Below are positions 29,071 through 59,626 of a DNA stretch of 64,000 nucleotides, one piece after another. The number at the start of each line of letters is the position of its first letter. The first letter of the stretch is position 1. Position numbers and translations under genes: made by a program. The stretch is from assembly GCF_000143415.4 (NCBI RefSeq), contig NW_003314261.1, positions 2,863,266-2,927,265 on the forward strand, given 5' to 3'. The notes under the pieces were generated by a model that had not been told where the DNA came from, did not search any database, and saw only the letters and a list, made by a program, of their open reading frames with translations. Source of the stretch: Selaginella moellendorffii. Lineage: Eukaryota; Plantae; Lycopodiophyta.

Positions 29071-29198
29071 ACACAATTTACACAACGCATTGTCCTTTAT
29101 AAAAAACTTACCAAAACATAATGTTCTTTAAAAAAACAATTGTCCTTTAAACAATACCAAACCACCAAACGTATTGTTCGAAAACATATTGTCCTCCT

Positions 29199-32100
29199 CT
29201 AGACGAGCGAAGCCACCGTGGGATGGAGACTCTTCGCGAGCGCCTCAAAGCTCCTGCCTAGCTGCAATTCATCCAAGCTCACCTGGAACACACCCCCGCC
29301 CTCGCAAGCCATCTCCTCCAACACTTCCCTTGACGAAGTGTCACTCCCAAAGATGATTGTGTGAACAACCACCCTCGGCTCCACGCTCTTGATCCTCCTC
29401 ACGAACGCCACCGGATCACTCCCACCATTGTTCTCACCATCGCTCAAGAAGATAATCGCCGGAGGCCTCCTATCCTCCAAAGATCTGTCAAGTATCTCCT
29501 CCGCGAGCTCCAGTCCCAAGGAGTAGACTGTCCCAGCCGACCAGTGGTGCCCGAGCAGCGCATGAACCTCCAACTCCGCCATCGCCACCTTCTCCACAGA
29601 GATCACCGCCGACCCCCCAAACAGCACCACCGACATGGTGTCGCGGATACCAGCCGCCAGCCTCGTCCGGATGAACCTCACCATGGCCTCGTACACGCAT
29701 CCCAGCCGGCAGGGAGGAAAGTTGGCCATGCTCGGCTGCACGTCCCAGGAACTCACAAACACGACGTGGTTCTCTCAGGTGTCCTCGCTCACGTATCCCG
29801 CCACCCCCGAGGTGGAACTCACGGGCGCGTGCCACAGCTTCTCGGTGCAGTAGGATCTCGCCGCCGACTGACCGTCATCGCCAAGGTGCTCAGACGAGGC
29901 ACACGAGTAGGCGCACAGCGCAAACGAGCGCTGGTCCTCGTCCGAGCACGGGTCCTTGAAGCGCATGCTCTTCCAGTAGGCCGCGTGAGTGAGCTCGTCC
30001 TTGGCAACGTCAAAGTTCGGCCCATACTTCTTGCCTGGCACCGTCCGGGATGGAGATCGCCTTGCACACTCCAAAGACGGTGTCGCACACCGCCAAGTGA
30101 ACGTGTCCCCGGCCCCGGGCCTTACAGTGCATCATGCACATCTCCGCAGCACCTGACTCCCCCCAAGAGTATTTCCGGACCTCCTCGGTCTCGGACGCGA
30201 AAAACTTGTCCATCATGTTGCCGTGCGTGGTGTCGTGGAGCCCGCGGTGTCCCCTGGCCAGGTTGCAAAAGTAGCCGCAGCCTTGGCAACGAACCGGGCA
30301 GAAGTGGATGGCACTCGTCGTGTGTACGTGCAGCTAAGCATGGGTATTGTTGAAAGCTCGCAGCATCCTTTTCTCACGCCGTTTTGCTCCAAAACGTGCT
30401 CGTACTCAAACTGCGACCGCTTCCCCACGAACGTCTTCGTCTTCGTCACCACCTCCTCGCAGATCCCCGGCGACTGGCACAGCTCCTGGCACGGGTGCTC
30501 GATCTCGCAAAAGTGCTGAATACCGCTCCTCGTCGAGTGTAAGTGGTCGGCGGTGGCACACTTTCGGTGGCACCCCGGCATGCAGCACGGCATCGGGCAC
30601 ATCTTCTCGTGGGGAGTCTGTGATCGCTCGGTGAGACGCAGATGTTGTCGCAGCCCGGGAGCTGGCAATTTTCCTTGCACATATGCTGCCTTGAGTTGCA
30701 CTTGTGCTCGCCCGGGTGGCCAACTTTCCTGGAGCACACCTTGTTGCAGTTGCTCGACGCGCCGAGGAGCTCGCACTCGTGGTCGCAAGTGTGCATCTTG
30801 AGCTTGCAGTCGTGAGAGCCTTCGTGACCGGCAACGTCCGCGCAGTGGCTCGCGGAGCTCGTCCTTTCCTCCGTGCAGTACGTGCAAAACTCCGAGCACC
30901 GGTGGTTCCCGTTGCAGCTGTGCGATCTCTCGTGAGACTTTTCCAACGAGCACCGGAGGAATCAGCGGGCGCACTTGCAGCTGCACAGCGCCAGGCCCTC
31001 CTTGAGGCCAGAGATCATCGCTGCCGCCTCGAGCACCAGCTTCTGGACGTCGCCTTCAGTGGCAAACGCAGCGGTGTTGGAGCTGATCCACTTTGTGACA
31101 CAGTCCTTGCGTCTCTCGACAAGCTCCGCCAGGAAAAACTCTGCTTTCCTGTGCCACTCATCATCGCTTCTACCGGTCCGCGGCACCACCCTCTCAAACT
31201 CGCCCAGCAGCTGCTCCAGCACAGCTCCAGATAAATCCAAGTCACCATGGCAGGCGAGTCGGAGACCGGCATCGTCAACTCCGAAAGCGAGACCCTCGAT
31301 ACTGAGAACGGCATCTTCGATCGGTTCCTCAGTGTCGAAGTTGACGCGAGGCTTGCACGATCTTGCGACTTTCGTTGGCTGTCTTTATAAATGCGACCAT
31401 GTTGACCTCTTCAATTCTGTCTGCTGAGCGCAAGTTCTTGGCAAGCATGGTCAGCTTGAACGCGATCCGCTTGGAATCAATCGGCGACCAGTCCTTCGAG
31501 CTGATTTGAGCGATTATGAGCTTGAGGTCCAGCAGAAAACTCTTCCCATTCGTGTGAACCGGCCCCAATTCCTCCACGCAGTGAGCAATCTGGGAGATGC
31601 TTTCGTAGAACTCGCAACAGTTGAAAGGTGGCATAGCGCATATCTCCACTTCGCCACCATACATTCTCGTCAGGAAATTCTCCTCCGACTTGCTGCAAAT
31701 CTGCGCTATCTTGGAGTAAAACTCGTGCCTCAGGTCCTCGACGTCTGCTGCGTCCACGTCCTTGATAGCCATGTAGAACAGACCCTTGAAGAGCTTCTCG
31801 TCTTGCTTAACCAAGCTCACTCCTGCCTGGAACCGATCGAACAGAGCCTCGGTTTCCTTATCAAGGTGGAAGTCCTGCACGTCAGCATATCAGAAAGCTC
31901 GAAACAATGAGTCTCACTACAAAACTCACCTTTTTGTTGAAACCTGCTGCATTAAGAATCGAGAATAGCATGTCCTCTTGCTCGCTCCTTTCAAAACTTC
32001 CGAGTCCCTCGAAGTCGAGAATGACATATAAGCAGCCCTCCACCGTGCAAGTGGTCATCCACACACCGTCTGTGCATCGCCCTCCAGCTACGTCCAGCAA

Positions 32101-35100
32101 AGAACCGCTGAGATGATTCAGAAGATACGACTTCCCGCTGCTTTGTTTCCCCATGGAGGAGATAACTTTGACAGGCCCGTTCCAGCTCTGGATGACAGCG
32201 TCGTAGAGTCCAAAGCGAACGATCTCCGCGAGAGAGATAGAGTCCGCGTAGTTGACATCGGTTGCCATTCTCATGCCGTTGATCAGAGGCCGCAAGCTGT
32301 TGTTCTCTGTTCGAGCAATCTGGACGGGAACCAGGCACGAAAGCCTAGAATATCATGATCATTGTAAGCCGTCGCAAGAAATCTCCCAGGCAGCGCCGGC
32401 TCGTCCGGACCTCAAGCTTGCGATCAAAGTGCTCAGCCTCGAACGAGATGTCCACGTTTAGAACCTCCTTCCTTTCTCTCGACGAAGCTTGTCCAGCGCC
32501 ATCTTAGCATGCTTCACGACTTCGGCGTCGATACCGTTGTGGGATCCATTGAGCACTCTGACGAGCATGCGAAATGTAATGCACCTCGGCGACGCTCTGA
32601 GCAGAGGCGGGCTCACTGCGTACTTGTCGAAGATGTGGTAGAGGTAATCGAGCTCGTAGCAAGAGCTCGACGGCTTGGCTGTTTCTTCCGCGGAGCCAAG
32701 CTTGTCGCGGAGGCGAATCTGGCAAGTCTGAGACGCCAAAGTTACGTCCAGCACGACCGACTGGAGGACGTTGTTCTCGTCAAGTATCAGGAGATGCGTT
32801 TGACTTCCAAACAAGACGACCTGTGCTTCGAGCTGATGAGCGCTACTGACACGGATATCCAAAAGCGTCACAGTCTTGATGAGCTCGCAAGTGTCGTCAA
32901 GCCTGTATACTTGAGCTACAAGCGTCTGGAAGTTCGCGGCTTCTGGAATCTCCTCACCTTTGCAAATAGCCACCAGGCAGAGACCATTCGGCGTGACGCA
33001 GGCCTTGAGAAAAGAATCCGGCAACTGGATCGTCCGAGGCTTCATCATTGCTGGTTGAGCGACCTCAAACACCCTCACGCAGCGTGTTGCATCGAACAGC
33101 AGAAGCTCCCTCTGGATGGAACAAAGCGAAGGCCAGTGATGGTGGTGCTGCCGTGATACTTGTCCAACTGTATGTCGACCCCAGACCAGAAGAGCTCACG
33201 GAAGCCATCGGTAAACCGAAAAATCTTTATAGCTGTAACGGACTGTTCGTAGAAAGCAATTGGACGCCTCATCGGAAGCAGCCAAGTCAAACCTCACCTT
33301 TTGAGTAACTTCATGGGCTCCCTCTCAGGAATGCGGATCCTGCTACCAAAACTTTGGCAGAGATAGATCGCCATGCACGACTCCACCACTCCCTTCACGA
33401 AAAGTAGCGCCTGGCCGGACCTGAGAAGGATCACGTTGCTCTACTCTTGGGAGTCGATATCAGCAATCGCCTGGAGCCCCAAACTACTTGGAACGATGAT
33501 ATGGTCGTTCTTGACCGCTTGCGACTCCAGCTCCTTCTTCTGGGGTAGAAACTCCACCACCTTCCAGATTATCCGCTCGCTGTGAATCTGCTGCCTCAGG
33601 AAACTAATGGCGATCTTTGGCGAGTCACTCTTCAGATAGTTGATGATCCCCCAAGAAGAGCCACCTCTTGTTGGCTTGCAGATCTTTGGAAGCGCCTCTT
33701 CGTCCCTCTGTGACAGCTTCGCCTTGTAGATCGAAGCCACGTCCGACTTCTCCTGCTTCAGAGATTCCACCCGAGCTCTATGCAGCGTTTCAAGTTCCAG
33801 CTTCACCTTAGACTTGAGGATATGGAAGAAGCTGCTCTCCACGAAGTCCAGAAATATTCTCATGAACTGCTGCATGCAGCTAGCGCGGATTGAATGCGAC
33901 AACTCGGGTTCCTCCAGTTCCTGGCTTTGGAGTTCCGTAAGCTTCTTGTTGAACTTCACGCTATCGAATTCGTCCAGGCAGTCCGCAAGAATGCATTGCA
34001 GAAGACAATCGTCTGTGACAGCCACCTTGTCCTTCAGAGATGCTGCAAGCTGGACTTTCTTCTTGAGCGCGACTCCCAGTTGTTCCGCACAGAAATCAAG
34101 CCACTGCCTGAAATGGTCTCCTGCCGGATGATTTTTGACACGGTTTTCTTTTCGACAAGGAGATCAAAGTTGTCGGATGAAACAACCTCACGAGCACCGC
34201 CGGAGTTTGTTATGATCTGAGCGTCCACTCGAGAGTGATCCCTCGAGATTACAGTGAAAGTCTCCCCAGAAGTAATAGTCCCGGAAAACCTCTTGCTTTC
34301 TCGAGCAATGACGAAGGATCTGTCATAGCCTTCCACCGCGACTTTCGATCCAATGAACACTTTCTTCTTCTTGTCCGCTGCTAGAACTTCCAGCAGCTTC
34401 GCCTCCATCTCCGAAAGCGCCTTCCCGTCAGCTTCTATGGACTGGCCGTTCCACCCTTCATGATACTTGCTGAAGTCTAGCGAGCTTGTGCAGGCCCGGT
34501 TTTCGCCATCTGCCCGAAGCTTTTCCTCCCACGGACAGACGAGCCTCAGGTAGGCACTCAGACCTCAACCTCCTCCTTTTTGATGTTCGAGAGCTCTTCA
34601 ATGCTAGAAAACTCGCTAGCTGAGGCGCCAATCTTTTCATCCAGAGTTGCCAATGCCTTACACAGCTCCTGACCAACATCCGGCATGGCGCTATCGCAGA
34701 AAAGGATAAAGTCCTCGTCCTTCATCTCCGTGTAGTCGATCTGGACGTCCCCCCAGCTCTTCACGACTTCACCGAGCTTCTCCGGTGCCACGGTCGCGTG
34801 ATCGTGCGAGAAAGACTCCTTCGGGGTGTACTTCTCGGTCTCAAGCAGCCCAGTGCGATAGAAGCCTTCGCTAAGCTTGCGAGGATCGACGCTCCACCTC
34901 CGGCGGGCAATCGAAAGCCTCACCTGACGTTGAAATCGTTGTCGCTCGACTTCACCATGGAAACTTGGAGCCGCTGAGTCCGCTTTCTCTTGCTGCTCGA
35001 CGTGCCAATCGAGGCCATGGACGCGCCACCATTCCCCAGCTCAATGCAGCTATACACCACGTCGCACAGCTCCACCAAGTAGCGTATGAAGTTGCAAGAG

Positions 35101-35620
35101 ATGTCGCTCCTCCTCGCATCCGTGAACTTCTTGCTCGGCTGCCAGTAGAAGATCAAGAACTTGCGGCCGTGCAAGGCACCGTAGAGACCCGCCGGAAGCT
35201 GGTCGGACCTCAGCTTGGCGATGTCCTCCTCAGAGAAGGCGTTCTCTCTCGCAAAAATGTCCACTAGCAAGCCTTTGCTCCCGTAAAAACCCACCGTCTC
35301 CAGCGACACAGCCTCCAAAAGGCTCGTGTCGAGAAACCATCGCTGATCCTCCACCCGAATGGATCCAGGAGCAAGCTTGTTGAAGAGCTGGAAGATCTGG
35401 GACTCCGACAGCAGCACCTTCTCCACAAAGCTCAGGTCTTGCTTGTCTCAATGACATTGAAGAGAGCGCCAGCTTCTTTCGAGGTTGCCGCGGCGCTAGC
35501 AGCAGTAGGAGAAACCACCACCAGATCACGCTCCATGTCGTCTCTTGCGGGTGCATCACGGCCTTGGAGTTCCCCTTCTTCTATGAACTCGAAACCATCG
35601 TCATCGCAGCCTCCATCCAT
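29199..35620 (-). pseudogene. Disabled paralog of the giant GTPase-ZnF-VWA gene
   Basis: Colinear with and highly similar to 46754-53335, including the intron, but broken into more than 10 ORF pieces by frameshifts and indels. The VWA DKSGS motif is deleted. Confidence 0.92.
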
Positions 35621-36066
35621 GGTTCACCTTTCGAGAAGCGATGAGGTCACGCAAGAATAAACGAGATATCAACGCACCTCGGCTCAATGCGGCTTGGAAG
35701 AACGATCAAAAACTGGAAATGCCTCACCAGTTCTTCGATCTTTAACGGGCGATGGCGTCGGGAGTGCGATCGACTTCACTGCGGAGAAACAAAAGCTCAC
35801 CGCCGAAGAGCTGGAGATTTTTAGAAAGAGCAAGACACTAGCTACTAGCGCCGCCTTGGTAAAGACCCTGCATGCAAATTTATGATGGCTGGCAGCGTAG
35901 AGAAAGTTAAAACGCTAGGTAACTAGGCCAGTAGAGTTTACCTCTCGTTCTCAATGGAAAAGACTCCACATTCCACACAGAAAGAGCGAAAAGAACGCAA
36001 AAGTTCAAATCAAACATGAACCACATCAAATGAAAAGAATTATAGAGCTAGAAACTGAATCTCCCC

Positions 36067-36710
36067 TTAAGTCTGATCTCTCCAAATGGAACCACCTTTT
36101 TTAACTGTCACCGCCACCTTTATGTCAGTCTTGTTGGTGTTCTTTCCTTCCGGAGGCCAAGGATGACCACAGACTGGAGCTTTGAGAACAAAGCCTTCTG
36201 GTAGAATGGGACTCACGGGGCGATCAACCAGTGGCGCAATCTTTGGTTTGGGCCTTGCAGCTCGGGGAAGTAAGCTTGAACCAGTGACCGGTGTCGTGAA
36301 CTTTACGAACGGTTGCTCGATTGCGATCTCAGCATCTGCTAACCTATTTCCAAACAAACCAAATCCTTCGTTAGAATGTGCCAAGCGAGTGACTAAGTGC
36401 ATAGGATCCAATATATACTATTTCAGCCTCTCGAGAAGCATAGACAAATCATAAAACTAGAAAAATAGAAAACCTTGGAGCTCGAACGGAGGTACTTCTT
36501 CGGGAAACGAACGCGTAGAGGAGTCTGTCCATCCTCGAAACCCAGCCTCGGTTCGTCGCGCCCTTTGTCCTCGTGCTCACCGCTCCAGCGCGGAGTTTCT
36601 TGCGCAATCGGGGATAGTTGTATTGATGGCTTGTTGGCGGCCATCTCGTTGTGGCGTCGCCCATCTGGCGGGCGCCGGGCAGAGGGATCCTTAGAACCCT
36701 AAACCCCAAA
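36067..36710 (-). pseudogene. Deleted uL15 (RPL15) duplicate
   Basis: Patches near-identical to 27695-29070 ([46 protein letters not shown]) with large deletions. Retains intron and 3' flank sequence. Confidence 0.9.
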
Positions 36711-38241: not shown

Positions 38242-38569
38242 ATCAAATCTCTCTGATTCAATAGAAGATAAATGTCGAAGAGTAATATCTTTCTCTGTCT
38301 CCGCAAGTTCATGAGCTCATGTATGGCAACTGTTTAACTTTGTATTGCTGACATTGCTCCAGATTAGAGGTGTGGTGTCATTGTCGAACCAACAAGTTGG
38401 CAAGTCTAGGTTTGTGTTTTTTATTACACTGGCTCGACCAGGTACTAGGAATCGAGATCGTCCGGGGCCGGGCGGACTTATAGCTGATGGTCCTTGACTC
38501 CGCCCCCGCCGGCTATTAAAACCTGGAGAAATTGGCAAACCTTGGAGGAAACCATTGGAGCGTAGCAGA

Positions 38570-39106
38570 AAGCTTTCCACGTCAATAGCTTCAGCAATCT
38601 AAGGTCTCCATTTTGTTAGCCATGAGGAATGCTGCTAAGCTTCCACATATTTCCGGAGTAACTATCACATTGTCGTGTTGGACCACCTTGTTGTCCTTAA
38701 GCATCTTCGGACGCCTTCATCAGCCTACTAAGGAACAGTGACGGCCGAAGGGGGGAGCACCCAGGCCCAGCCGCTGGAAAGCATCGTGGTGAAGATCTCC
38801 AACGTGGAGTCCACGTTCACGGGGTGGTGGTGGGCAGGATCAAGGATGGGTTTCCACACCTCTTGCAGGTCGGGGAGTTTAGCATTGAGACTGGAGGGAT
38901 CGGTCATCCTGTGTAAACAGGTCGATCAGCCAGGGATAATTGGGAAAGCTGGCGGTCTGCTCAGCGTGAACGTGAGCTTCATGAGCGTGGGGATGACATC
39001 GCCCAGGAAGCAGGCAGTGAGGGCAATAGGCGTGGATGAGGAAGGAAGTGCTGCACAGGATCCGGGCCATCCCAACGGTAGGAAGCTTCCTTCTATCACA
39101 GGTTGA
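38570..39106. pseudogene. D-3-phosphoglycerate dehydrogenase fragments
   Basis: Plus strand 38738-39106 encodes ACT-domain LEGSVILCKQVDQPGIIGK..VNVSFMSVG..PRKQAV.AIGVDEE. Minus strand ~38580-38700 encodes KDNKVVQHDNVIVTP and IAEAI. Confidence 0.75.
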
Positions 39107-40478: not shown

Positions 40479-43400
40479 TGTGAGGGCCAAATGTACAATT
40501 ACGATGCCGTATACTAATATTAGGGCCAAGTGTATGGCCACGATGCCGTATACTAATATTAGCATAATGGGATTTTAATAGCCGTCAGATTAGTTTCAAT
40601 CCAGACCACTCGCTCTTGTATATAAGCTAGGGTTTTTGGGCTAATTGATATGCACATTTTTGTATTCCCTTTCCATATTCCAAGCACTCATATTGGTGGA
40701 GGTGAGGGGCACCTTTGATTGTCCCTGAGGAGTGCTTGAATTTAGGATTTTGGTTTAGATCTAGCTTTTGCATCATTTAGATCTAGCTTTTTTTATTTCC
40801 TTTCTTTTGTTCTTCCCTTTCAGGATTTTGGTTTAGATCTAGCTTTTTGCATTGTCTAGATCTCCCATTTCCTTCTCGTTTTTTGTCGTTTATCTTCTTT
40901 TGCTCTTTCTTCGTCCGTCTTCATGGTAGATCAGCAATCTCCTCCTTTGACTCTAGAGCAGCAGTTGGTCTAATTGCTTGATGCTATGTGCTTGCAATTG
41001 AACAACCAAACTCAATTGATAGCGACATTCACGGCACGTGGTCCAACTCGTCCTGCTCTTGGTGCCAATCCTCGCATTCGGCCGGAGTTCTTTCGTGGGA
41101 ATCCTGGGGATGATGTGTACCATTGGTTCGATCATTTCACGGTGATTGCCACATATCATTCTTGGGATGATGCTCGACATTTGCATGAGTTTCCCACGTG
41201 TCTCCAAGAGACGGTATTGCAGTGGTACAATGGATTGAGTGCGGCCACTCGTGAGGATTAGAGTGTTCTTCCGAACGTCTTCAAACGCGCCTTCGGAGAT
41301 GCCAACGATTGTGATGATGCCTTCCAACAATTGCATCGTCTTCGCCAAGGGCCATCTGAGTCGGTGATGCAATTTGGCATTCGTTTCCGAAGTCTTTTGC
41401 TTCGTGTGGAGCCCAATCTGTCGGAGCAGATCAAGCTAGGAATGTTGTGGCCAGCACTTCGTCAAGATCTTGTCGGCCTTATGCATGCACTTGCTCCTAC
41501 CACCCTTGACAATGCTCTTCGCTTGGCACAACTTTATGAGACGTCACCTCTTCCACTTCTTACTGCATGTCCTTCCGCTCCACTTCCTATGAGTGATGGT
41601 CCTGTTCCAATGAAGGTTGATGCTGCTGCTACTCGAGTCCAAGGACAAGGGCAAGAACGTGGTCGTGGCCGTGATGTTTGTTGCTGGGCATGTGATGAAG
41701 TTGGTCATACTTATCGGCGTTGTCGGTGCTTTCCGGATTGGTGACCTCCATTTCCTGGGTGGAGACCTTGGCGTCAGCAACGTCCCATTGGTGCTGTTGC
41801 GGTGGAAGGTTTGGACACCGAGGTGCATCCGGGAAATGAGGAGTCGCACAAGTAACGGAAGGACCTTGCGCGAATAAGTCAGTGACCCCTCCATCTTTCT
41901 TTCAAGAGTATCATCAAGGGGTTCACTTAGCATCGGTTCATCCAGTGTTTACTTTCAAAGCTCATTTTTATAACAAGAGGTCTCTTATTATTCTCTCCGT
42001 GTTGGTTGATATAGGTTCGAGTTTATCTTCTATTGCTCGACCTATTGCCACACGTTGCCGTTTACACTTGCGTCATGCGGCGGAACCAGTTTTCATTTTT
42101 TATGGCAACGGCCGTACGGATGCCTGTGCATGGGATGAGGTGGACCTGATTGTGCGTATAGGCGATCTCAAGCTTGAGTTGCAGTCATTGCGGGTGGTGC
42201 CGAGTCAAGCTTTTGACCTCATTCTTGGTATGGATTGGTTGCAGTGCAATCATGCCAAGTGTGATTTTGAAGCTTCTCCCCCTTGTCTCATACTTCCTTA
42301 TGTTTCATCCATTCCTCTCACTTCTGTACCTCTTTGTTCATCTACTTCTACCTCTGCTTCCATTACTTTTGTTTCCCCACTATTTCCTCCTATGTTTCCA
42401 TCTTGTTCTGCTCTTCCCTTTTCCGATCCCTCCGACGATCTTTGTGTTGCAGCAGTGGACCGGCTCATGAAAGCGTATTCTGATCTCTTTGAATTTGACC
42501 TATCGTGTGGGGCCAAGATTGCCACATGTCATCCAATTCCAACCGGGGATGCTTGTCCAATCAAGGTTCCTGTTCGTCGTCGGTCACCCAAGGAGATCAA
42601 GATTTTACGTGCAAATGTCAAGGAGATGTTGGAGAAGGGTGTTATTCGGAAGTTGCAGAGTCCTTGGGCATGTGAACCTCATCTTGTGACGAAGCCTAAT
42701 GGGAGTATTCGTTTCTACATCGACTATCGTCCGTTAAACGAAGTGACGATCCCAGATGTGTATCCTCTTCTGCACATGCTGATCTCTTGGATCGTCTGGG
42801 GCAAAGTTGTTGGTTCACCAAGCTAGATCTTGCTTCTGGGTATTGGCAAGTACCGATGGCCGAAGAAGATATTCCTAAGATTGCTTTTTGTACACCATTT
42901 GGTTTGTGGTACTAGCAAGTACCGATAGCCGAAGAAGATATTCCTAAGACTGTTTTTCGTACACCATTTGGTTTGTACGAATTCTTAGTGATGCCGTTTG
43001 GTTTGAACAATGCTCCAGCAACTTTCCAGCGGATGATGGACGAGGTTCTTTGTGATATGCCAGAGGTGACAGCTGACTTCATTGATGATGTCTTGATCCA
43101 CTCGTAGGGGACGTGGGAGGAACACGTTCATGATGTTTGTAAAGTGTTGGATCGGCTACGCGATGTTGATTTAAAGCTGAAGCGGTCGAAGTGCGTGTTT
43201 GGATCCAAGGACACAACTTATCTTGGGTACTGTATTTCTCGTGAGAGTTTGCAAGTTGGTCCTGACAAACTTGTGGCTGTTCTAAAGTTCCCTACTCTAA
43301 AGTGTGTGAATGATGTGCAATGCTTCTTGGGCAAGGTGCAGTATCTCGGGTGTTTTGTGGATCATCTTTCTGATCGCACTACACCATTGTGAGCGTTGCT

Positions 43401-45593
43401 AAAGTCATCAACGTCATCTTTCATCTGGTCTCTGGATTGCGAGCGGGCGTTCGGGGATCTCAAAGAGTTATTGACAACTCCTCCGGTTTTGGCATATCCT
43501 GACTACACTCGACCTTTTATTTTGCGTGTGGATGCTTCTGACATTGGTCTTGGAGGTGTGTTAATGCAAGAGAGCTCAAGTGTGCCTGGTTAGCGCCATC
43601 CCATTGCATATATAAGCCGTACATTACAACCAGTGGAGATGAACTACTCCACGACAGAAAATGAGTGTTTAGCAGCAGTTTGGGGTTTCGAGAAACTTTA
43701 TGCATATCTACATGGTTCTCGGACGTTACTTGAAGGTGACCATGCTGCTGTTACTTTGTTATTAAAGCGGAAGAACCTGGTTGGTCGTACTGCTCAGTGG
43801 CCTTTGAAGCTTCAGATATATGATTTTGATGTTGTTCACCGCCCAGGGAGTTCTATGGCTGATGCTGATGCCCTTTCTCGAGCTCCTCTTCCTTCTTCAC
43901 TCTCTTCTCATATTTCTGATGAGCCTGTCGTTCCAGCATCTGTGGATTTTTTAAACAAGGATTTTGTGTTGTCAGCAGTTGCTATACTTGACGTTCAGTG
44001 TCCACAAGGTGCAGAGCAAGATCTAGCTTCGCTTGATGAGGTTCGCGAGGCTCAAAAGATTGAGCCATGGATTCGAAAGCTTCGAGATGGGTTTGAGAAT
44101 CTTGCATCACTTGTTGATGACTTGTCTTTCTAGCATTTACATTCTCAATATTGGCTTGAAGATGCCCTTCTTTATTTTGTGGGGACAGATCCTGATGATC
44201 ATTTACGGCTGGTGGTGCCTTCTATCTTTATTTTGCGGTTTCTCCATGCCTACCATGATTCTCCTGTTCTAGATGGGCATATGGGACATCGTCGTGTAAT
44301 CGAGAAGCTATGCAGGTTTTTCTATTGGCCAGAGATGCGACGTGATATTATCTGGTATGTGCGTAGCTGCGTTTGGTGCCAAGCTCGTAATACTCCCCCT
44401 CGGGCTGCGGAAGGACGGTTGGAATCAATTGCAGTTTCCTGTCCGTTTGAGTTGGTGGTGTTTGATCTTATGGGACCTTTTCCATGGTCGACTGTTGGTA
44501 ATGAGTATGTTATTATTGCTTCTGACTATTTGATTCGTTGGGTGGAAGTTGGTGCTCTTGCTAGCACCTCTGCAACTGCTGTTGGATACTTCTTCCTCAA
44601 TCGAGTGGTGTTCCAGCATTCTTGTCCTGAGCGGATTCTTTCAGATAATGGTCCCGCATTTATGGCTGAGGCATTTCATGTTTTGACGTCTCGGTTGGGG
44701 ATTCGCCACACTTTCACGAGTGCTTATCATCCACAATCAGATGGTCTGGTGGAACGGCTTGTTTGGACATTCAAGGGGATGATTGCGAAGTATGTGAACT
44801 TTCAGCATTCAGATTGGATAGTTATTTGCTATCTCATCGATATGCATATGTTACAGGGGTGCAGAGTTCTGTTGGTGCTTCACCATATAAACTCCTATAT
44901 GATCATGATCCAATATTACCAACGAAGCTGGGTTTACCTTCGCGATTGCCACGAGCTGCAAATGCTAGGTCACGGGATCAATATTTGACAAGCATTCTTC
45001 CACTTATCCGAGCGGAGTCTGCCGAACACTTAGGCCGCGTACAAGTGGGACAACAACGGCGCTACAACTCCTATCATCGTCCACATGCAGAGTACAATGT
45101 TGATGATTTGATGTTAGTCTGTTTTCCGCATCTTACGGTACATGGTTTATCTAAGGAGCTCCTTGCACAGTGGAAAGGACTATATAAGATGTTATGGCAA
45201 GTTGGACCACAAGTTTATGAGGTTTGGCATGACGTCCAGCAGGCCAATCCTCCAGAGATTGTGCATGTGCAGCGGTTGAAACGCTTCATACACAAGGATC
45301 AGGAGCGGATAATACCATCTACAGATCCGCCGATGCCTCCTCTTGATATTCCTCTAGATCCCAGCCCGTCTACAAGAGAACCCTGATGGTCTTCCATTAT
45401 TCCGAGAGGAGGGGATGATATGAGGGCCAAGTGTACGGCCACGATGCCGTATACTAGTATTAGCATAATAAGATTTTGGTAGCCGTCGGATTGGTTTCAA
45501 TCCGGACCACTCGCTCCTGTATATAAGCTAGGGTTTTTGGGCTAATTGATATGCATATTTTTGTATTCCCTTTCCATATTCCAAGCACTCACA
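40479..45593 (+). mobile_element. Full-length (decayed) Ty3/gypsy LTR retrotransposon
   Basis: LTRs 40479-40692 and 45419-45593, TSD AATT, PBS 40694-40709, PPT GAGAGGAGGGGA (~45404-45415). Domain order gag (CCHC: CWACDEVGHTYRRC), PR (LVDIG), RT (FIDD), RH (DAS, NYSTTE), INT (HHCC, SDNG). No chromodomain seen. Several stops and frameshifts. Confidence 0.96.
40694..40709 (+). other. Primer-binding site complementary to the tRNA-Ala 3' end
   Basis: TGGTGGAGGTGAGGGG directly after the 5' LTR. The sister copy has TGGTGGAGATGAGGGGTA. Plant tRNA-Ala ends ..CCCCGCATCTCCA(CCA). Confidence 0.8.
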
Positions 45594-46753
45594 AATTTAA
45601 ATTACTAAATTTTAAATAAAATTCTCTTACAAAGCAATGCAATAGTTTGAAAGGTAAAGTACAATTTTTAATATAAATTTATTATATATATAATAGAGAT
45701 TTGATTCTTCTCTAAAATATATTATTTTGAAAGATTTGATGTTTACAATTTATGGATCTTAACTCTCACTTTCATTTGAAGAGAGAGAAATACATAAATA
45801 TTTATAATTTTTAGTATTGATAATTTCAACTTTTGTGATATTTTTTATTGAGGTAAGAGTCAAGAGCTATAATCACTATCTCCTTACGTAACACAATTAA
45901 ACCACATAAGAGAAAAAAAAGGATAATAAAGATAATGATAATAAATTGAAGATAAATGTGTAACAAATTGTATTTTTGTAGGAATAATGTTAATTATATC
46001 ACTCATATTTTCAACTCTCCTCCTTTCAAAATTGAAACTAAAATTTTCAAAGTTTTGAGTCTTATCTGAGATGAGTGTAGCAACTTACTATTCTTTAGGT
46101 ACTATATTAAATTTTGTCACTAGTATAGTATCTTTAAGCCTCTTCATATGGTTAGCATTGGTGTTGGAAAAATATAATTAATACCATCTTGAAAGTCTTA
46201 TTTGCTTTAGTGCAAATCAGCAATATATGGTCAATGCATACAGTACAGCATCTTAGAGCATGATCCTGGGACTTAGAGATATCACCCACAGTTCACACCT
46301 TGTGCAGGTTTCTAGTATACAGTATAGAGTACTTAATGCATACACTATAGAGTCTTAGAGCATGTTTCTAGGATTGGCATGTGGTTTTAGTGATGCACAG
46401 CTCTAAATATCACCCATGGTTCGCCCCTGCAGGATTCTAGCATAATGTATACAATACAGTAGGGCATGGTGGTTTTAGTAAGACATCACCTCGCCTGAGT
46501 GAGGATATTGTAGCGGGGCAAATGTTGCCCCTCATGTGCACATTTCTAGGATACCAAGATAAAAGATATCTTAAATCTGCCTGGTCAATATCACAAATCT
46601 CCAGGATTGCAAATATAAGAATAATCAAGCATAGGAAGGAGACCGTCCAGTTTGTGGTCTAAAAGTTTGAAAACACTTGAAACCATAGTCTTCAAACAAA
46701 ACCAATTGTCCTTTAGCAAAACGTATAAGACAAAGAGAATCCTTCGTTAAGCT

Positions 46754-49700
46754 CTAGACGAGCGAAGCCACCGTGGGATGGAGACTTTTCGCGAGTGCCT
46801 CGAAGCTCCTGCCCAGCTGCAATTCATCCAAGCTCACCTGGAACACACCCCCGCCCTCGCGAGCCATGTCCACCAACACCTTCCTCGGCAACAAGTCACT
46901 CCCGAACACAATCGTGTGCACAACCAGCCTCGGCTCCACGCTCTTGATCTTCCTCACGAACGCCACCGGATCACTCCCACCAGCATTCCCACCATCGCTC
47001 AAGAAGATAATCGCCGGAGCCTTCGCATCCCCCGCAGACCTCCCAAGTATCTCCTCCGCGAGCTGGAGCCCCGCCGAGTAGACCGTCCCACCCGAGCTGT
47101 CATGTCCGAGCAGCGCGTAAACCTGCGACTCCGCCATCGCCACCTTCTCCATAGCTATCACCGCCGAGCTCTCAAACAGCACCACCGACATGAAATCGCG
47201 GATCCCCGCTGCCTGCCTCGTCCGGATGAACCTCACCATGGCCTCGTACACGCATCCCAGCCGGCTGGGAGGAAAGCTCGCCATCCTCGGCTTCGCATCC
47301 GGGGAGCCCATGGATCCCGACTTGTCGATCACGAACACGACGTGGTTGGCCGCGTCTCTCAGGTGCTTGCACACGAAGACATGCCCGTCCTCGCTCACGT
47401 AGCCCGCTACTCCGGACATGGAGCTCACTGGCGCGTGCCACAGCTTCTCCGTGCAGTAAGATCTCTGCTCGTTTGCTCCATCGCCGCGGTGCTCGGACGA
47501 CGCACAAGAGTGCGCACACAGCGCAAACAAGCGCTGATCCTCGTCCGAGCACGGGTCCTTGAAGCGCATGTTCTTCCAGTAGGCCGCGTGAGTGAGCTCG
47601 TCTTTCGCGACGTTAAAGTCGGGCCCATACTTCTTCGTCTCGTGCCTGGCACCGTCCGGGATGGAGATCGCCTTGCACACTCCAAAGACGGACTTGTTCC
47701 TCTCGCACACCGCCAGATGAACGTGTCCCCGGCCCCGGGCCTTGCAGTGCATCATGCACATCTCTGCGGCGCCCGACTCCCCCCACGAGTACTTCCGGTC
47801 CAGGATGTCCACCTCCTCGGTCTCGGACGCGAAGAACTTGTCCGTCATGTTCCCGTGCGTGGTGTCGTGCAGCCCGCGGTGTCCGATGGCCAGGTTGCAA
47901 AAGTAGCCGCAGCCTTGGCAGCGAACCGGGCAGAAGTGGATGGCGCTCGGGTTCGTCGTGTGGACGTGAGGCCCAGAATGGGTATTGTTGAAAGCTGGAA
48001 CCGGCACGCAGCATCCTTTTCTCACGCCGTTTTGCTCCGAGACGTGCTCGTACTCAAACTGCGACCGCTTCCCCACGAACGTCTTCGTCTTCTTCACCAC
48101 CTCCGTCACCACGTCGCAAATCCCCGGGGACTGGCACGCCTCCTGGCACGGGTGCTCGCTCTCGCAGAAGTGCTGGATACCGCTCTTCATCGAGTGGAAG
48201 TGGTCGGCGGTGGCACACTTGCGGTGACACGCCGGCATGCAGCACGGTGTCGGGCACATCTTCTCGTGGCATGCGTGGAGCTTGTGATCGAGCTCGCTCG
48301 GTGAGACGCAGATGTTGTCGCAGCCCGGGAGCTGGCACTTCTCCTTGCACATATGCTGCCTCGAGTTGCACTTGTGCTCGCCCGGGTGGCCGACTTTCCT
48401 GGAGCACACCTTGTTGCAGTTGCTCGACGCGCCGAGGAGCTCGCACTCGTGGCCGCAGGTGTGGCTCTTGAGCTTGCAGTCGTGGGAGCCTTCGTGACCT
48501 GCAACGTCCGCACAGTGGCTCGCGGAGCTCGTTCCCTCCTCCACGCAGTACGTGCAAAACTCCGAGCAGCGGTGGTTCCCGTTGCAGCTGTGCGAGCTCT
48601 TGTGAGACTTTTCCAACGAGCACCGGAGGAAGCAGCGGGTACACTTGCAGCTGCACAGAGCCAAGCTCTCCTTCATGCCAGAGATCATCGCTGCCGCCTC
48701 GAGCACCAGCTTCTGGACGTCGCCTTCGGTGGCAAACGCAGCAGTGTTGGAGCCGATCCACTTTGTGACACGGTCCTTGCGCCTCTCGACGAGCTCCACG
48801 AGGAAAATCTCTGCTTTCCTGTGCCATTCTTCATCACCTCTACCAGTCCGCGGCATCACTTTCTCAAACTCGCCCAGCAGCTGCTCCAGCACCGCTCTGG
48901 ATAAATCCAAGTCACCATAGCAGCCGAGACGAAGGCCGGCATCCTCAACACTGAAAGCGAGACCCTCAATACCGAGAGCTGCATCGTCGATCTGTTCTTC
49001 GGTGTCGAAGTTGACGAGAGGCTTGCCATCTTCCATACACCCCTGGACGACGGCTGAGCGCAAGTTCTTGGCAAGCATGGTGAGCTTGAAGGCGATCCTC
49101 TTGGAATCAATCGGCGACCAGTCCTTTGAGCTGATTTGAGCGATTATGAGCTTGAGGTCCCGCAGAAAACTCTTCCCATTCGTGTGAACCGGCTCCAACT
49201 CCTCCACGCAGTGAGCAATCTGGGAGATGCTTTCGTAGAACTCGCAACGGTTGAAAGGTGGCATAGCGCATATCTCCACTTCCCCACCATACATTCTCGT
49301 CAGGAAATTCTCCTCCGACTTGCTGCAAATATGCGCTATCTTGGAGTAAAACTCGTGCCTCAGGTCCTCGACGTCTGCTGCGTCCACGTCCTTGATAGCC
49401 ATGTAGAACAGACCCTTGAAGAGCTTCTCGTCTTGCTTAACCAAGCTCACTCCTGCCTGGAACCGATCGAACAGAGCCTCGGTTTCCTTATCAAGGTGGA
49501 AGTCCTGCACGTCAGCATATCAGAAAGCTCGAAACAATGAAAGTCTCACTACAAAACTCACTTTTTTGTTGAAAACCGTGATGTTGCTGACTGCAGCATT
49601 AAGAATCGAGAGTAGCATGTCCTCTTGCTCGCTCCTCTCAAAACTTCCAAGTCCCTCGAAGTCGAGAATGACATATAAGCAATCCTCCGCCGTGCAAGTA

Positions 49701-52700
49701 GTCATCCACACACCGTCTGTGCATCGTCCCCCTGCTACATCCAGTAGAGAGCCACTGAGATGATTCAGGAGGTAGGACTTCCCGCTGCTTTGTTTCCCCA
49801 TGGAGGATATAACTTTGACAGGCCCGTTCCAGCTCTGGATGACAGCGTCGTAAAGTCCAAAGCGGACGATCTCCGCAAGTGAGATGGAGTCTGCGTAGTT
49901 GACATCGGCTGCCATTCTCATGCCGTTGATCAGAGGCCGCAAGCTGTTGTTCTCTGCTCTAGCAATCTGGACGGGAACCAGGCACGAAAGCCGTCGCAAG
50001 AAATCTCCCAGGCAGCGCCGGCTTGTCCGGACCTCAAGCTTGCGATCAAAGTGCTCAGCCTCGAACGAGATGTCCACGTTTAGAACCTCCTTTCCTTTCT
50101 CTCGACGAAGCTTGTCCAGCGCCATCTTAGCATGCTTCACGACTTCGGCGTCGTTACCGTCGTGGGATCCATTGAGCACTCTGACGACCATCCGAAATGT
50201 AATGCACCTCGGCGACGCTCTCAGCAGAGAAGGGCTCACTGCGTACTTGTCGAAGATGTGGTAGAGGTAATCCAGCTCGTGGCAGGAGCTCGTCGACTTG
50301 GGTGTTTCTTCCGTGGAGTCACGATTGTCGCGCAGGCGAATCTGGCAAGTCTGGGACGCCAAAGTTACGTCCAGCACGGCCGACTGGAGGACGTTCTTCT
50401 CGTCGTCAAGTACCAGGAGATGCGTTTGGCTTCCGAACAAGACGACCTGTGCTTCGAGTAGATGCACGCTACTGGCACAGATATCCGGCACCGTCACTGT
50501 CTTGATGAGCTCGCAAGTGTCGTCAAGCCTGTATACTTGAGCTACAAGCGTCTGGAAGTTCTCGGCTTCTGGAATCTCCTCACCTTTGCAAATAGCCACC
50601 AGGCAGAGACCATCCGGCGTGACGCAGGCCTTGAGAAAAGAATCCGGCAACTGGATCGTCCGAGGCTTCATCATCGCTGGTTGAGCGACCTCAAACACCC
50701 TCACGCAGCCTGTTGCATCGAACAGCAGAAGCTCCGCTCTGGATGGAACAAGGTGGAGCCCAGTGATAGTGGTACTGCCGTGGTACTTGTCGAGCTCTAT
50801 GTCCACGCCAGTCCAGAAGAGCTCACGGAAGCCATCGGTAAAGCGGAAAATCTTGATCGCTGCAAGGGACTGCTCGTAGAAGGCAATGAAGTTGGACGCC
50901 TCATCGAAAGCAGCCAAGTCGAAGCCCCTCTTGAGCACCTTCATAGGCTCCCTCTCAGGAATGCGAATCCTGCTACCAAGACTTTGGCAGAGATAGATTG
51001 CCATGCACGACTCCACCACGCCCTTAACGAAAAGTAGAACCTGGCCAGACTTGAGAAGAATCACGTTGCTCAGAGTATACTCTTGGGAGTCGATATCAGC
51101 AATGGTCTGGAGCCCGGAACTACTTGGAACGATGATATGCTCGCTCTTGGCCACTTGCAACTCCAGCTCTTTCTTCTGGGGTAGAAACTCCACCACCTTC
51201 CAGATAATCCGCTCACTGTGCGTCTGCTGCCTCAGGAAGCTAATAGAGATCTTTGGCACATCACCCTTCAGAAGGTTGAAAACTCGCCACGAAGAGCCAC
51301 CACTTGTTGGTCTGCAGCGTTTGATCTTGATCTTTGGAAGCGCCTCTGCATCGCTCTGCGAAAGCTTCATCTTGTAACCCGAGGCCACGTCCGACTTCTT
51401 CTGCTTCAGAGACTCCACCCGTGCCTTATGCTGCGCTTCCAGTTCCAGCTTCACCTTGGACTTGAGGATATGGAAGAGACTGTCCTCCACCAAGTCCAGA
51501 AATATCCCCATGAACTGCTGCCGTCTCATTACGTAGGCTCCCATGCAGAGAGACCGGACTGAATCCGACAGACAGGGATCCTCCACTTCACGGCCTTGCA
51601 GTTCCTTCAGCTTCTTGGCGAAGTCCACGTTACCGAATTCGTCTAGGCAGTCCGCAAGAATGCACTGCAAAAGGTAATCTTCGGTTGCATCCACCTGGTC
51701 CTTCAGAGAAGCTGCAAGCTGGATTTTCTTCTTGAGCATGAGTCCCACTTCTTCCGCACAGAAACCAAGCCACTGCCTGAAATGATCTCCTGCTGGATAA
51801 TCCACGGAGAGGAACCTGGTGTTCCTCGCTACCGGTTTGTCTCCGGCAAATAGATCAAAGTTGTCGGATGAAACCACCTCAGGACCACCATTTCTTGTTA
51901 AGAGACGCGCCTCAACCCGAGAGTGATCCTTGATTGCGGTGAAAGTCTCCCCATAAGTCATAGGCCCGGACAACCGCTTCCCCTCTCGAGCAATGACGAA
52001 GAACCCCGGAAAGCCTTGCACTGAGACTTTCGATCCAATGAATACTTTCTTCTTCTTGTCCGCTCCCAAAACTTCGAGCAGCTTCGCCTCCATCTCCGAG
52101 AGCGCCTTCTCGTCAGCTTCTATGGACTGCTCGTTCCACCCCTCGTGATACTTGATGAAGTCCACCGAGCCTGTGCAGGCCCGCTGCTCGCCACCTCCCA
52201 GAAGAAGCTTTTCTTCCCATGGACAGGCAAGCCTCAAGTAAGCATTCAGACCTCTTGCAAACACCGAGAGAACCTCCTCCTTTTCCTTGTTGAAGAGCTC
52301 TTCAGTGCTGGAAAACTCGCTACCCGCGGCGCTGATCTTGTCATCCAGAGTTGCCAATGCCTCACGCAGCTCCTGACCAACATCCGGCATGGCGCTCTCG
52401 CAGAAAAGGATAAAGTCCTCGTCCTTCATCCCCGTGTAGTCGATCTGGACGTCCCCCCAGCTCTTCACGACTTCACCGAGCTTCTCCGGTGGCACGGTCG
52501 CGTGATCGTGCGAGAAAGACTCCTTGGGGGTGTACTTCTCGGTCTCAAGCAGCCCAGTGCGATAGAAGCCTTCACTAAGCTTGCGAGGAGAGAGCCTCGA
52601 CGCTCCACCTCCGGCAGGCAACCGAAAGCCTCTCCTGACGTTGAAATCGTTGTCGCTCGACTTCACCATGGAAACTTGGAGCCGCTGAGTCCGCTTTCTC

Positions 52701-53335
52701 TTGCTGCTCGACGTGCCAATGGAGGCCATGGACGCGCCACCATTCTCCAGCTCAATGCAGCTATACACCACATCGCACAGCTCCACCAAGTAGCGTATGA
52801 AGTTGCAAGAGATGTCGCTCCTCCTCGCATCCGTGAACTTCTTGCTCGGCTGCCAGTAGAAGATCAAGAGCTTGCGGCCGTGCAAGGCACCGTAGAGACC
52901 CGCCGGAAGCTGGTCGGACCTCAGCTTGGCGATGTCCTCCTCCACGAAAGCCTTCTCTCTCGCAAAGATGTCCACCATCAACCCCTTGCTCCCGTAAAAA
53001 CCCACCGTCTCCAGCGACACAGCCTCCAAAAGTCCCGTGTCGAGAAACCATCGCTGATCCTCCACCCGGACGGATCCAGGAGCAAGCTTGTTGAAGAGCT
53101 CAAAGATCTGGGACTCGGACAGCAGCACCTTCTCCACAAAGCTCAGGTCTTGCTTGTCCGACTTCACCTCGATGAGGCTGAAGAGAGCGCAAGCTTCCCT
53201 CGAGGGGGCCGCGGCGCTAGCAGCAGTGGGAGAAACCACGACCAGATCAAGCTCTATGTCCTCTCTTGCCGGTTGTTCGTCACGCTCCACTTCTTCCACG
53301 AACTCGAAACCATCGTCATCCCATCCTCCACCCAT
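46754..53335 (-). CDS. Giant (~2174 aa) protein: N-terminal unknown/beta-propeller-like region, VLIG/GBP-type GTPase, Cys/His-rich NFX1-like repeats, C-terminal VWA
   Basis: Two open exons (53335-49562, 49504-46754) joined by a 57-nt GT-AG intron. G1 GKQSSGKS (49775-49798), G2 GRCT, G3 DFEG, G4-like IKD. About 400 aa Cys/His-rich. VWA MIDAS DKSGS..T..SDG. Confidence 0.9.
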
Positions 53336-54035
53336 GGCTCACCTTTCGAAGAAAGCGATGAGGCTCGCAAGGAAAAACGAGAGATCGACTCACCTGGAGC
53401 GCAAAGCTCGCGGCTTTGTTGGATGGCAAAGACTGGAAAGACGGGAAAACGAGCAATCTCTTCAAGAGTTCTGCTACGACCACGATCAAGAACGCGAGAC
53501 AAGAAGAAACTCACCGACGCCGCGGTCGATAACGAAGAAGCTCGTCGCCGCCTAAGAACTCGACTCCTCTCGAATCGATGAAAAGACCTTACTACCGCCG
53601 CCTTGTTGAAAGACCTACATGCAGATTTATAAAGGCTAGCGTAAAAAAAGTTAAAACGCTAGGTAAGTAATTTACCTCTTATTGTCGCCCTCGATCGAAA
53701 ACAATCGGACAATGTGGGGGAAAGCGAGAGATTTTTCGCGTTCTTTTGCAGCGATCGCGTGCCGATCGAGCTCTTTCTTTTGCGGAATGGATCATCGCTG
53801 AGAAATCCCCACTGTGAGTCGAGACAACGAAGATATTTCTCACCCACATTCCAGGAAGACCGATCCAGGCGATCGATGGAGGCGTGGAAGATCGATCGAT
53901 CGCTGTAAATGAGCACGCCGCGAGCTCCTCAATCGATCGCAAAAGATCTCTCTAGGACCGTTAAGAGTTTAGGGTTCATTAGAAAACTAAAGGTTGGAAT
54001 TGCCATTTTCTTTTTCCCCTGCGAAGGGGACGGCT

Positions 54036-58768: not shown

Positions 58769-59626
58769 TTATAGTGAACATAGAATATGCTTTTCAGTAT
58801 TTGAATCCCACATTATATAGTTTGGAAATTTTGTTGTATAAATTACTATATTACAATCATTCTGAACAACAAGAAATACAGGAAAAATGCAATTTTTACA
58901 ATACCTATTTGTAGACCATTGAGGTTCTTTGTTATAATATATGACAAAGTTACCATCATTTTGAAGTTTTAACTTACAATTAAAAATATTTTCTGTTTTA
59001 GTTTTAGATTCCCATACCTTATTTTTTAATGAGAACAAAACAAGCTTACAATTTGATTGAAATAATAATACATTTTTACCATTTGAAGAAGTTAAAAACA
59101 TTTCAGTATGTAAAATTGCAGGATTATATAAAATAGAAGCTTCAATATGACATTTTAAATTATATTTTTTAAAAGTAGTACTTACAATTGAGTTTGGAAA
59201 CTCAAACTCCCAATCATTTGTAATTTTATATGTTATTAAATAATGGTTGCTTTCTCTAAGAAAATTGTCTGTACAATATTCTGATAATTCAGAAAAAATT
59301 TGATTATATATATTTCTGAAACCTCTTCTTAAAGCTATTCCTGTAATTCCATCTGGACTTTCAATATAACATTGATCTTTAGTTTTAATCATTAAATGTA
59401 CAAGTCCTTCAGAAGTAGGTATTAAATCTCCATCTGCATAATTAGATGGATATGGATCTTGAGAACCATCAGTCAAAATTTTCACTAATAAAGATTCTAA
59501 ACTACTTATTATTAATCTAACATCAGCTGAATCTAATATTCCAATTTTTCCAATTCTAGATTTATAGCTATTTACTGTTATTAAGAAAATGAAAATTAAA
59601 AATAATAAAATATTTCTTTTATGCAT
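58769..59626 (-). CDS. Secreted protein with unknown N-terminal domain and C-terminal bulb-type (GNA-like) mannose-binding lectin domain
   Basis: Intronless 285-aa ORF with signal-peptide-like MHKRNILLFLIFIFLITVNS. Two intact QxDxNxVxY sites (QNDGNFVIY, QNDCNIVIY), one degenerate (QSNCKLVLF), and W-x-S/T motifs after each. Confidence 0.85.
   Translation of the reverse strand: MHKRNILLFLIFIFLITVNSYKSRIGKIGILDSADVRLIISSLESLLVKILTDGSQDPYPSNYADGDLIPTSEGLVHLMIKTKDQCYIESPDGITGIALRRGFRNIYNQIFSELSEYCTDNFLRESNHYLITYKITNDWEFEFPNSIVSTTFKKYNLKCHIEASILYNPAILHTEMFLTSSNGKNVLLFQSNCKLVLFSLKNKVWESKTKTENIFNCKLKLQNDGNFVIYYNKEPQWSTNRYCKNCIFPVFLVVQNDCNIVIYTTKFPNYIMWDSNTEKHILCSL

What the first reader, a model, noticed from the sequence alone, without database searches (positions are those of the whole stretch)
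46754..53335. Giant VLIG/GBP-type GTPase - zinc-finger array - VWA protein: candidate innate-immunity system in a non-seed plant
Seen: a ~2174-aa, nearly intronless (one 57-nt intron), GC-rich gene among neighbours that mostly carry 3-20 introns. In order it has an unknown N-terminal domain (VGFYGSK..GLY..IFYWQP..FIRYL), a beta-propeller-like stretch (AFDEASNFIAFY, LLLFDATGCVRVF, CVTPDGLCLV), a GTPase with MGKQSSGKS/GRCT/DFEG/IKD, ~400 aa of Cys/His repeats and a VWA with complete MIDAS. Established: the GxQSSGKS..GRCT..G signature resembles very large interferon-inducible GTPases (GVIN/URGCP) of the GBP/atlastin clan, which includes animal cell-autonomous immunity GTPases. I know of no characterised angiosperm protein with this architecture. 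Inference: a sensor (propeller/ZnF) - oligomerising GTPase - VWA effector defence protein, possibly shared with fungi or lost in seed plants. Local duplication and decay fit birth-and-death evolution typical of immune genes.
Basis: partly seen in the sequence, partly recalled or inferred. Interest (0 to 1): 0.88.

Follow-up and report, generated by a model that had tools for sequence, protein, structure and literature searches.

The report
Giant double-GTPase gene, spikemoss
This intact, transcribed spikemoss gene encodes a 2,174-residue protein with one complete GTPase and a predicted dead copy of it, from an unstudied family found in mosses, ferns, conifers, algae, fungi and sponges but not found in flowering plants; its build and evolution suggest cell defence, which nobody has tested.

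Summary
In detail: 2,174 aa, one 57-nt coding intron (spliced in RNA), all motifs present. It is Selaginella moellendorffii SELMODRAFT_402429. The scan noted this family before on other DNA (the broken allele s1-355617; a paralogue s1-402675).

New here: the 'unknown' N-domain folds like a truncated GBP/atlastin GTPase with no Walker A (pseudo-GTPase; Z 7.4, modest, but the top seven hits are one clan). The propeller is real, six-bladed, NHL-like and split by a helical insert. The whole architecture recurs across eukaryotes, including conifers, so 'lost in seed plants' is wrong. No angiosperm, prokaryote or virus hit was found. Relatives gained RING/B-box modules at either end.

Defence-like signs: a conifer array, pseudogenes, a null allele, and allelic amino-acid change concentrated in the propeller (22 non-synonymous/8 synonymous versus 1/12 in the GTPase). 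Against: no domain shows dN/dS above 1, that cluster looks like paralogue exchange, and some lineages appear low-copy and conserved.

Best reading (about 0.45): a GVIN1-like GTP-driven coat that marks intruders for ubiquitylation. No paper on the family was found.

The parts
46754..53335 (-). Intact gene, 2,174 aa (SELMODRAFT_402429)
49505..49561 (-). 57-nt coding intron inside the G domain; same position and phase in Sphagnum-like metagenome and Cryptomeria genes
53343..53393 (-). 51-nt 5'UTR intron
   Evidence: (one run)
52721..53203 (-). aa 45-205: degenerate, truncated GBP/atlastin-type G domain (pseudo-GTPase), no Walker A
52490..52678 (-). aa ~220-282: first part of the split beta-propeller
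51131..52489 (-). aa ~283-735: mostly helical/coiled-coil insert with small beta parts; least conserved region
50336..51118 (-). aa ~740-1000: rest of the six-bladed NHL-like propeller; hotspot of allelic amino-acid change at aa 897-1036
50036..50284 (-). aa ~1018-1100: helix-strand-helix-strand unit, possibly the missing C-half of the pseudo-GTPase (inferred, not shown)
   Evidence: secondary structure; inconclusive
49079..50020 (-). aa ~1106-1400: complete GB1/RHD3-clan GTPase with G1 (aa 1180-1187), G2, G3, G4
48659..49078 (-). aa ~1401-1540: presumed helical stalk (not modelled)
   Evidence: inference from sequence
47354..48658 (-). aa ~1541-1975: Cys/His array, presumed zinc-binding; no Pfam, PDB or Atlas match
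46757..47353 (-). aa ~1976-2174: VWA domain with complete MIDAS
29197..35719 (-). Decayed tandem copy (86% nt identity, many frameshifts)

Best explanation
A soluble giant GTPase of the GBP/atlastin/VLIG clan that works like GVIN1 or GBP1 in cell-autonomous defence. Shown: the parts, the complete G motifs, transcription and family range. Predicted by models: the pseudo-G domain and the propeller. Inferred steps: (1) the propeller and adjacent insert, the variable part, bind a foreign or damaged surface or nucleic acid; (2) the nucleotide-free pseudo-G domain packs against the active G domain and holds it off until binding, as SMG8 pairs with SMG9; (3) GTP drives G-G dimerisation and assembly of a coat; (4) the zinc array carries the VWA, whose MIDAS recruits an acidic partner (an E3 or AAA+ ATPase), so the target is ubiquitylated and cleared. 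Several lineages fused the RING E3 to the protein; Selaginella would recruit it in trans.
For: G1-G4 near-invariant in 62 aligned sequences; closest solved relatives GBP5/2/1 and Sey1; URGCP the best Pfam model. N-domain's top seven fold hits are GBP1, GBP2, ATL1, RNF112, Sey1, ATL3, SMG9 (Z 6.0-7.4); Atlas features agree; 0 of 47 have a Walker A. The GVIN1 model also has two large-GTPase domains and GVIN1 coats bacteria (bioRxiv 10.1101/2025.03.24.645074). RING and/or B-box at the N-terminus in some relatives, C-terminal RING in oomycetes, SAM, C2 and triple-AAA in others. Patchy range, at least 13 Cryptomeria gene ids, 19 mostly partial Taxus ids; species-level duplications on the tree; a pseudogene beside it and a frameshifted allele. 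Allelic change: propeller 22 non-synonymous/8 synonymous versus G domain 1/12, Fisher p 1e-4. Transcript held by 7 of 20 indexed runs, very low in two raw-read runs.
Against: No function tested in any member. No domain has dN/dS above 1 (allele 0.27 overall, propeller 0.81; Cryptomeria pair 0.17-0.52). The propeller cluster is a mosaic shared with the tandem copy, so paralogue exchange can explain it, and one allele is a pseudogene. Galdieria and Phytophthora members look low-copy and conserved. The Selaginella protein has no RING or B-box. Pseudo-G Z scores are under 8 and Foldseek and hhalign did not reach significance. No tree with GVIN, GBP or RHD3 outgroups could be built. Sample conditions of the RNA runs are not known.
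Confidence: 0.45

Rival explanations
1. A housekeeping or stress quality-control scaffold: the same GTP switch and ubiquitin link, but aimed at self targets (damaged organelles, aggregates, RNP particles), dispensable enough to be lost often.
For: Ancient, rigidly kept architecture; purifying selection in all domains; retained in the reduced genome of Galdieria with the G domain 93% identical among its copies; vertical descent with a shared intron in land plants.
Against: No hit in flowering plants or named model organisms in three searches; arrays, pseudogenes and a null allele; transcript absent from many runs.
Confidence: 0.3
2. An RNA-sensing restriction factor built like TRIM-NHL proteins: the NHL-like propeller binds RNA (virus or transposon) and the RING/B-box relatives ubiquitylate bound proteins. 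A narrower form of the defence reading.
For: Best propeller matches are Brat, Mei-P26 and NHL-2 NHL domains (Z 16.2-16.9) and Thin; relatives have the order RING/B-box, helical region, propeller; the pseudo-G/G pair recalls SMG8-SMG9 of RNA surveillance.
Against: Other six-bladed propellers score within about 1-2 Z; no Pfam NHL hit; RNA-binding residues not examined.
Confidence: 0.15
3. A divergent RHD3/Sey1/atlastin membrane-fusion GTPase.
For: Same clan; P-loop without the GBP/atlastin arginine, as in Sey1/RHD3 (own knowledge); Sey1 gives the longest PDB match.
Against: No transmembrane hairpin (highest 19-residue hydropathy 1.62, inside the propeller region); no Sey1_3HB hit; RHD3 score below cut-off.
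Confidence: 0.04

Closest known systems
GVIN1 / VLIG / URGCP giant GTPases
   Same: Best Pfam model (PF25683) in all 22 G domains tested; giant, intron-poor, soluble; two large-GTPase folds in tandem order (for GVIN1; here).
   Different: Below the Pfam cut-off (best 50.3 against 55 bits); adds a split propeller, zinc array and VWA that the GVIN1 model does not list; whether GVIN1's first LG domain is dead was not checked.
GBP1-5 and plant GBPL1-3
   Same: G-domain profile matches GBP structures best (E 7e-13); N-domain fold closest to GBP1.
   Different: No P-loop arginine, no GBP_C hit, no CaaX end; about four times the length of GBP1.
RHD3/Sey1/atlastin/RNF112
   Same: Same clan and G motifs; RNF112 also couples a RING to this GTPase fold (own knowledge).
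   Different: No membrane anchor; patchy and multi-copy.
SMG8-SMG9
   Same: A pseudo-G plus an active G domain of related fold (SMG9 Z 6.0; SMG8 as pseudo-GTPase from own knowledge).
   Different: One chain here; no link to SMG1 or NMD shown; pairing of the two domains not shown.
TRIM-NHL proteins (Brat, Mei-P26, TRIM71)
   Same: Six-bladed NHL-like propeller; RING/B-box in relatives.
   Different: No RING/B-box in this protein; propeller split and nested among GTPase domains; no NHL sequence signature.
ZNFX1 / RNF213 (NTPase plus zinc array plus E3 defence giants)
   Same: Design logic only (own knowledge).
   Different: GTPase, not helicase or AAA; Cys/His array matches no NF-X1 model or solved structure.

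Membership tests
GB1/RHD3 (GBP-atlastin-Sey1) GTPase clan | G1-G4 motifs and profile match to clan members | tested here: met
VLIG/GVIN/URGCP | PF25683 above curated cut-off | tested here: inconclusive
   best-scoring family but 50.3 bits at most against a cut-off of 55; 31.5 for the half domain here
VLIG/GVIN/URGCP | Two large-GTPase domains in one chain | tested here: inconclusive
   N-domain matches only the first ~two thirds of the fold, Z 6-7.4; completion by aa 1018-1100 not shown
VLIG/GVIN/URGCP | G domain groups with GVIN in a tree with GBP and RHD3 outgroups | not testable with these tools
   no outgroup sequences were returned
VLIG/GVIN/URGCP | Induction by infection and coating of pathogens | not testable with these tools
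   run conditions coded
RHD3/Sey1/atlastin | C-terminal transmembrane hairpin and three-helix-bundle stalk | tested here: not met
GBP/GBPL | P-loop arginine, GBP_C helical domain, often CaaX | tested here: not met
TRIM-NHL | N-terminal RING and B-box | tested here: not met
   absent here; present in relatives
TRIM-NHL | Six-bladed NHL propeller | tested here: inconclusive
   fold Z 16.9 to NHL, other propellers close behind, no Pfam NHL hit
NF-X1/ZNFX1 zinc-finger proteins | zf-NF-X1 repeats | tested here: not met
   no hit in 34 members or to any PDB chain
VWA with MIDAS | DxSxS..T..D | tested here: met

The most novel reading that the evidence does not exclude
An ancient, pan-eukaryotic, undescribed class of cell-autonomous immune GTPase: a split pseudo-GTPase carrying an inserted sensor propeller gates an adjacent active GBP-like GTPase, which drives coat assembly and ubiquitin tagging through a new zinc array and a VWA. 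It would be a non-NLR immune system of mosses, lycophytes, ferns, conifers, mushrooms and early animals that flowering plants lost, and a possible ancestral form of the double-GTPase design of GVIN1.
Probability: 0.3. Interest if true: 0.85.

Novelty: new variant of a known kind. Interest (0 to 1): 0.62.

Why it matters
Large GBP-clan GTPases are core animal cell-autonomous defence proteins, and their deep history is poorly mapped. A large family (796 clusters at 50% identity share the N-domain) with a fixed pseudo-GTPase/GTPase design was not found in flowering plants or named model organisms, which would explain why it is unstudied. It is present in tractable species such as Ceratodon and Ceratopteris, so the defence idea can be tested directly. 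Even if it is housekeeping, the nested pseudo-G/propeller build and the unmatched zinc domain are new structural targets.

Tried and rejected
Ten literature searches and two reviews found no description of the family; the library lacks most subscription papers.

No prokaryotic or viral relatives were found by pattern scans (limited sensitivity). Recent transfer from fungi is rejected: land-plant members form one clade (SH-aLRT 100) apart from fungi and share an intron.

The N-domain has no Pfam match in 47 members. Foldseek gave nothing significant for it. hhalign of the N-domain or the aa 1018-1100 unit against the protein's own G domain fell in the expected register but scored no better than controls; covariation was noise.

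The nSTAND3 hit in Mesostigma fusions is a by-product of a triple AAA. The 609-aa metagenome 'short forms' are exons of multi-intron moss genes. dN/dS values for the N-half of P0103 are biased by mapping and were discarded. One search was a frame slip and a term slip.

Full report
Observation. The gene is real. The minus-strand CDS runs 53335-49562 and 49504-46754, with a 57-nt phase-0 GT..AG intron; it encodes 2,174 aa with no internal stop and all quoted motifs. It is identical to Selaginella moellendorffii SELMODRAFT_402429 (EFJ38477.1, D8QQL6). RNA data show the intron spliced in three runs, reads from the expected strand, and a 51-nt 5'UTR intron in one run. Expression is low in two 2026 raw-read runs (11 of 9.2 million reads each). 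Seven of 20 indexed runs hold the transcript, and one run of the same study as the best holders does not; conditions are coded and contigs cannot prove absence.

Surroundings. A decayed tandem copy lies at 29197-35719 (86% nt, many frameshifts), separated from the gene by gene fragments and a Gypsy element. The same locus on another scaffold (L001, 98% nt, same RETICULATA-like neighbour; taken to be the other haplotype) has an 8-nt deletion at window-equivalent ~49212 that breaks the frame. So this plant appears to carry one intact allele, one null allele and a pseudogene. Earlier scan notes cover that null allele (s1-355617, checked here) and a 2,190-aa paralogue (s1-402675, s1-332916, not checked).

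Family. Searches return relatives in mosses, liverworts, ferns, Ginkgo, Taxus, Cryptomeria, Klebsormidium, Mesostigma, Botryococcus, Cyanophora, Galdieria, dinoflagellates, oomycetes, amoebae, Reticulomyxa, sponges, an acoel and Agaricomycetes. None of the named hits is an angiosperm, over length windows of about 240-3,900 aa, although conifer hits are 50-77% identical in the G domain. None is prokaryotic or viral. The order N-domain, about 750-1,250 aa, G domain, Cys/His array, VWA is kept in almost all full-length members. The N-domain profile finds 796 clusters at 50% identity. Land-plant members form one clade (SH-aLRT 100), apart from fungi, with species-level duplications (quick tree, deep nodes open, streptophyte algae fall elsewhere). 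They share the intron position. This is vertical descent in land plants with apparent loss in angiosperms, not in seed plants.

Active GTPase. G1, G2, G3 and G4 are near-invariant. The profile matches GBP5/2/1 and Sey1 (E 7e-13 to 1e-8). Pfam URGCP scores best in the family but stays under its cut-off. There is no membrane anchor, GBP_C domain or CaaX end. It is best treated as a separate branch of the GB1/RHD3 clan nearest VLIG; a tree with outgroups could not be built.

N-domain. Atlas features point to RHD3, GBP and Smg8/9 clusters. The AlphaFold model (pLDDT 80; core mostly above 90) has GBP1, GBP2, ATL1, RNF112, Sey1, ATL3 and SMG9 as its top seven VIA matches (Z 7.4-6.0, rmsd 3-5 A, 112-127 residues; repeated). 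Z under 8 is modest and Foldseek and hhalign were not significant, but the clan-wide agreement of two methods makes a degenerate G domain likely (my estimate about 0.8). The match covers only the first part of the fold. A helix-strand-helix-strand unit at aa 1018-1100 could complete it directly before the active domain, but profile and covariation tests were inconclusive.

Propeller and C-terminus. The model of aa 40-1112 (pLDDT 84) matches six-bladed propellers, best NHL domains (Z 16.9). The aligned range spans aa ~230-996, so the propeller is split by a ~450-aa mostly helical insert. The Cys/His array has 54 invariant columns and no match in Pfam, PDB or Atlas; it is not NF-X1 by these tests. 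The VWA MIDAS is conserved. Relatives add RING and/or B-box at the N-terminus, a RING at the C-terminus (oomycetes), or SAM, C2, ankyrin and triple-AAA modules. RINGs at both ends point to ubiquitin transfer as the output (inference).

Selection. Between the two alleles the G domain has 1 non-synonymous to 12 synonymous differences and the propeller 22 to 8 (p 1e-4). About 21 of 55 amino-acid changes fall in aa 897-1036. That stretch is a mosaic shared with the tandem copy, so sequence exchange or old polymorphism explains it as well as selection does, and one allele is broken. The valid Cryptomeria pair gives dN/dS 0.17-0.52. In several lineages the helical insert is the least conserved part and the G domain the most. 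This resembles a resistance-gene pattern but does not show positive selection.

Mechanism. Most likely (0.45): variable propeller region as sensor, pseudo-G as a brake, GTP-driven G-G assembly into a coat, zinc arm and VWA recruiting ubiquitin or AAA+ machinery. The model is GVIN1, which has two predicted large-GTPase domains and coats bacteria (bioRxiv 10.1101/2025.03.24.645074). Only the parts are shown or predicted; all four steps are inferred. Rivals: self-directed quality control (0.30), RNA-sensing TRIM-NHL-like restriction (0.15), membrane fusion (0.04).

Verdict. A real, apparently undescribed family (ten paper searches blank; library incomplete) within a known GTPase clan, with a new nested architecture. 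New variant of a known kind; interest 0.62.

Noticed in passing
window 53324-53335 (-), aa 1-14: The protein starts MGGG, as do Klebsormidium, Ceratodon, Calypogeia, Ginkgo and some Cryptomeria members, though the rest of the tail does not align. An acidic-aromatic stretch at aa 6-13 resembles an ATG8-interacting motif. Unexplained; possible N-terminal modification or autophagy link.
   Followed up: partly
window 49562: Spliced RNA contigs and the other haplotype have G at the last base of exon 1 where the window has A (both Lys): a SNP or an assembly error.
   Followed up: partly
window 40500-45600 (+): Degenerate Gypsy-type LTR retroelement between the gene and its decayed copy; L001 has two related elements at the matching place.
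   Followed up: partly
window 36099-36570 versus 27693-28512: Decayed partial copy of the neighbouring gene at 27695-29043 (ribosomal protein uL15-like by eye), so the duplication included flanking DNA.
   Followed up: no
window 37190-39106: Fragments resembling a cinnamoyl-CoA reductase/DFR-like gene and a phosphoglycerate-dehydrogenase-like tail (by eye; no Pfam hit for the latter).
   Followed up: no
window 58769-59626 (-): AT-rich intact ORF with a weak B-lectin hit (E 6e-5) inside a repeat island; also noted as s1-408448.
   Followed up: no
L001 10001-16833: Public model SELMODRAFT_408444 uses false introns to skip the 8-nt frameshift, so P0001 is an annotation artefact.
   Followed up: yes
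L002 10001-54678: Two tandem Cryptomeria copies; the public model P0103 appears to join halves of the two genes.
   Followed up: partly
P0123, P0126 (Mesostigma): Family members fused C-terminally to a triple AAA module right after the VWA, recalling VWA-AAA partnerships.
   Followed up: partly
Atlas hits: Three Ascomycota-rich clusters of 337-401 aa resemble the pseudo-G domain (score 0.93-0.94): fragments or stand-alone pseudo-GTPases.
   Followed up: no
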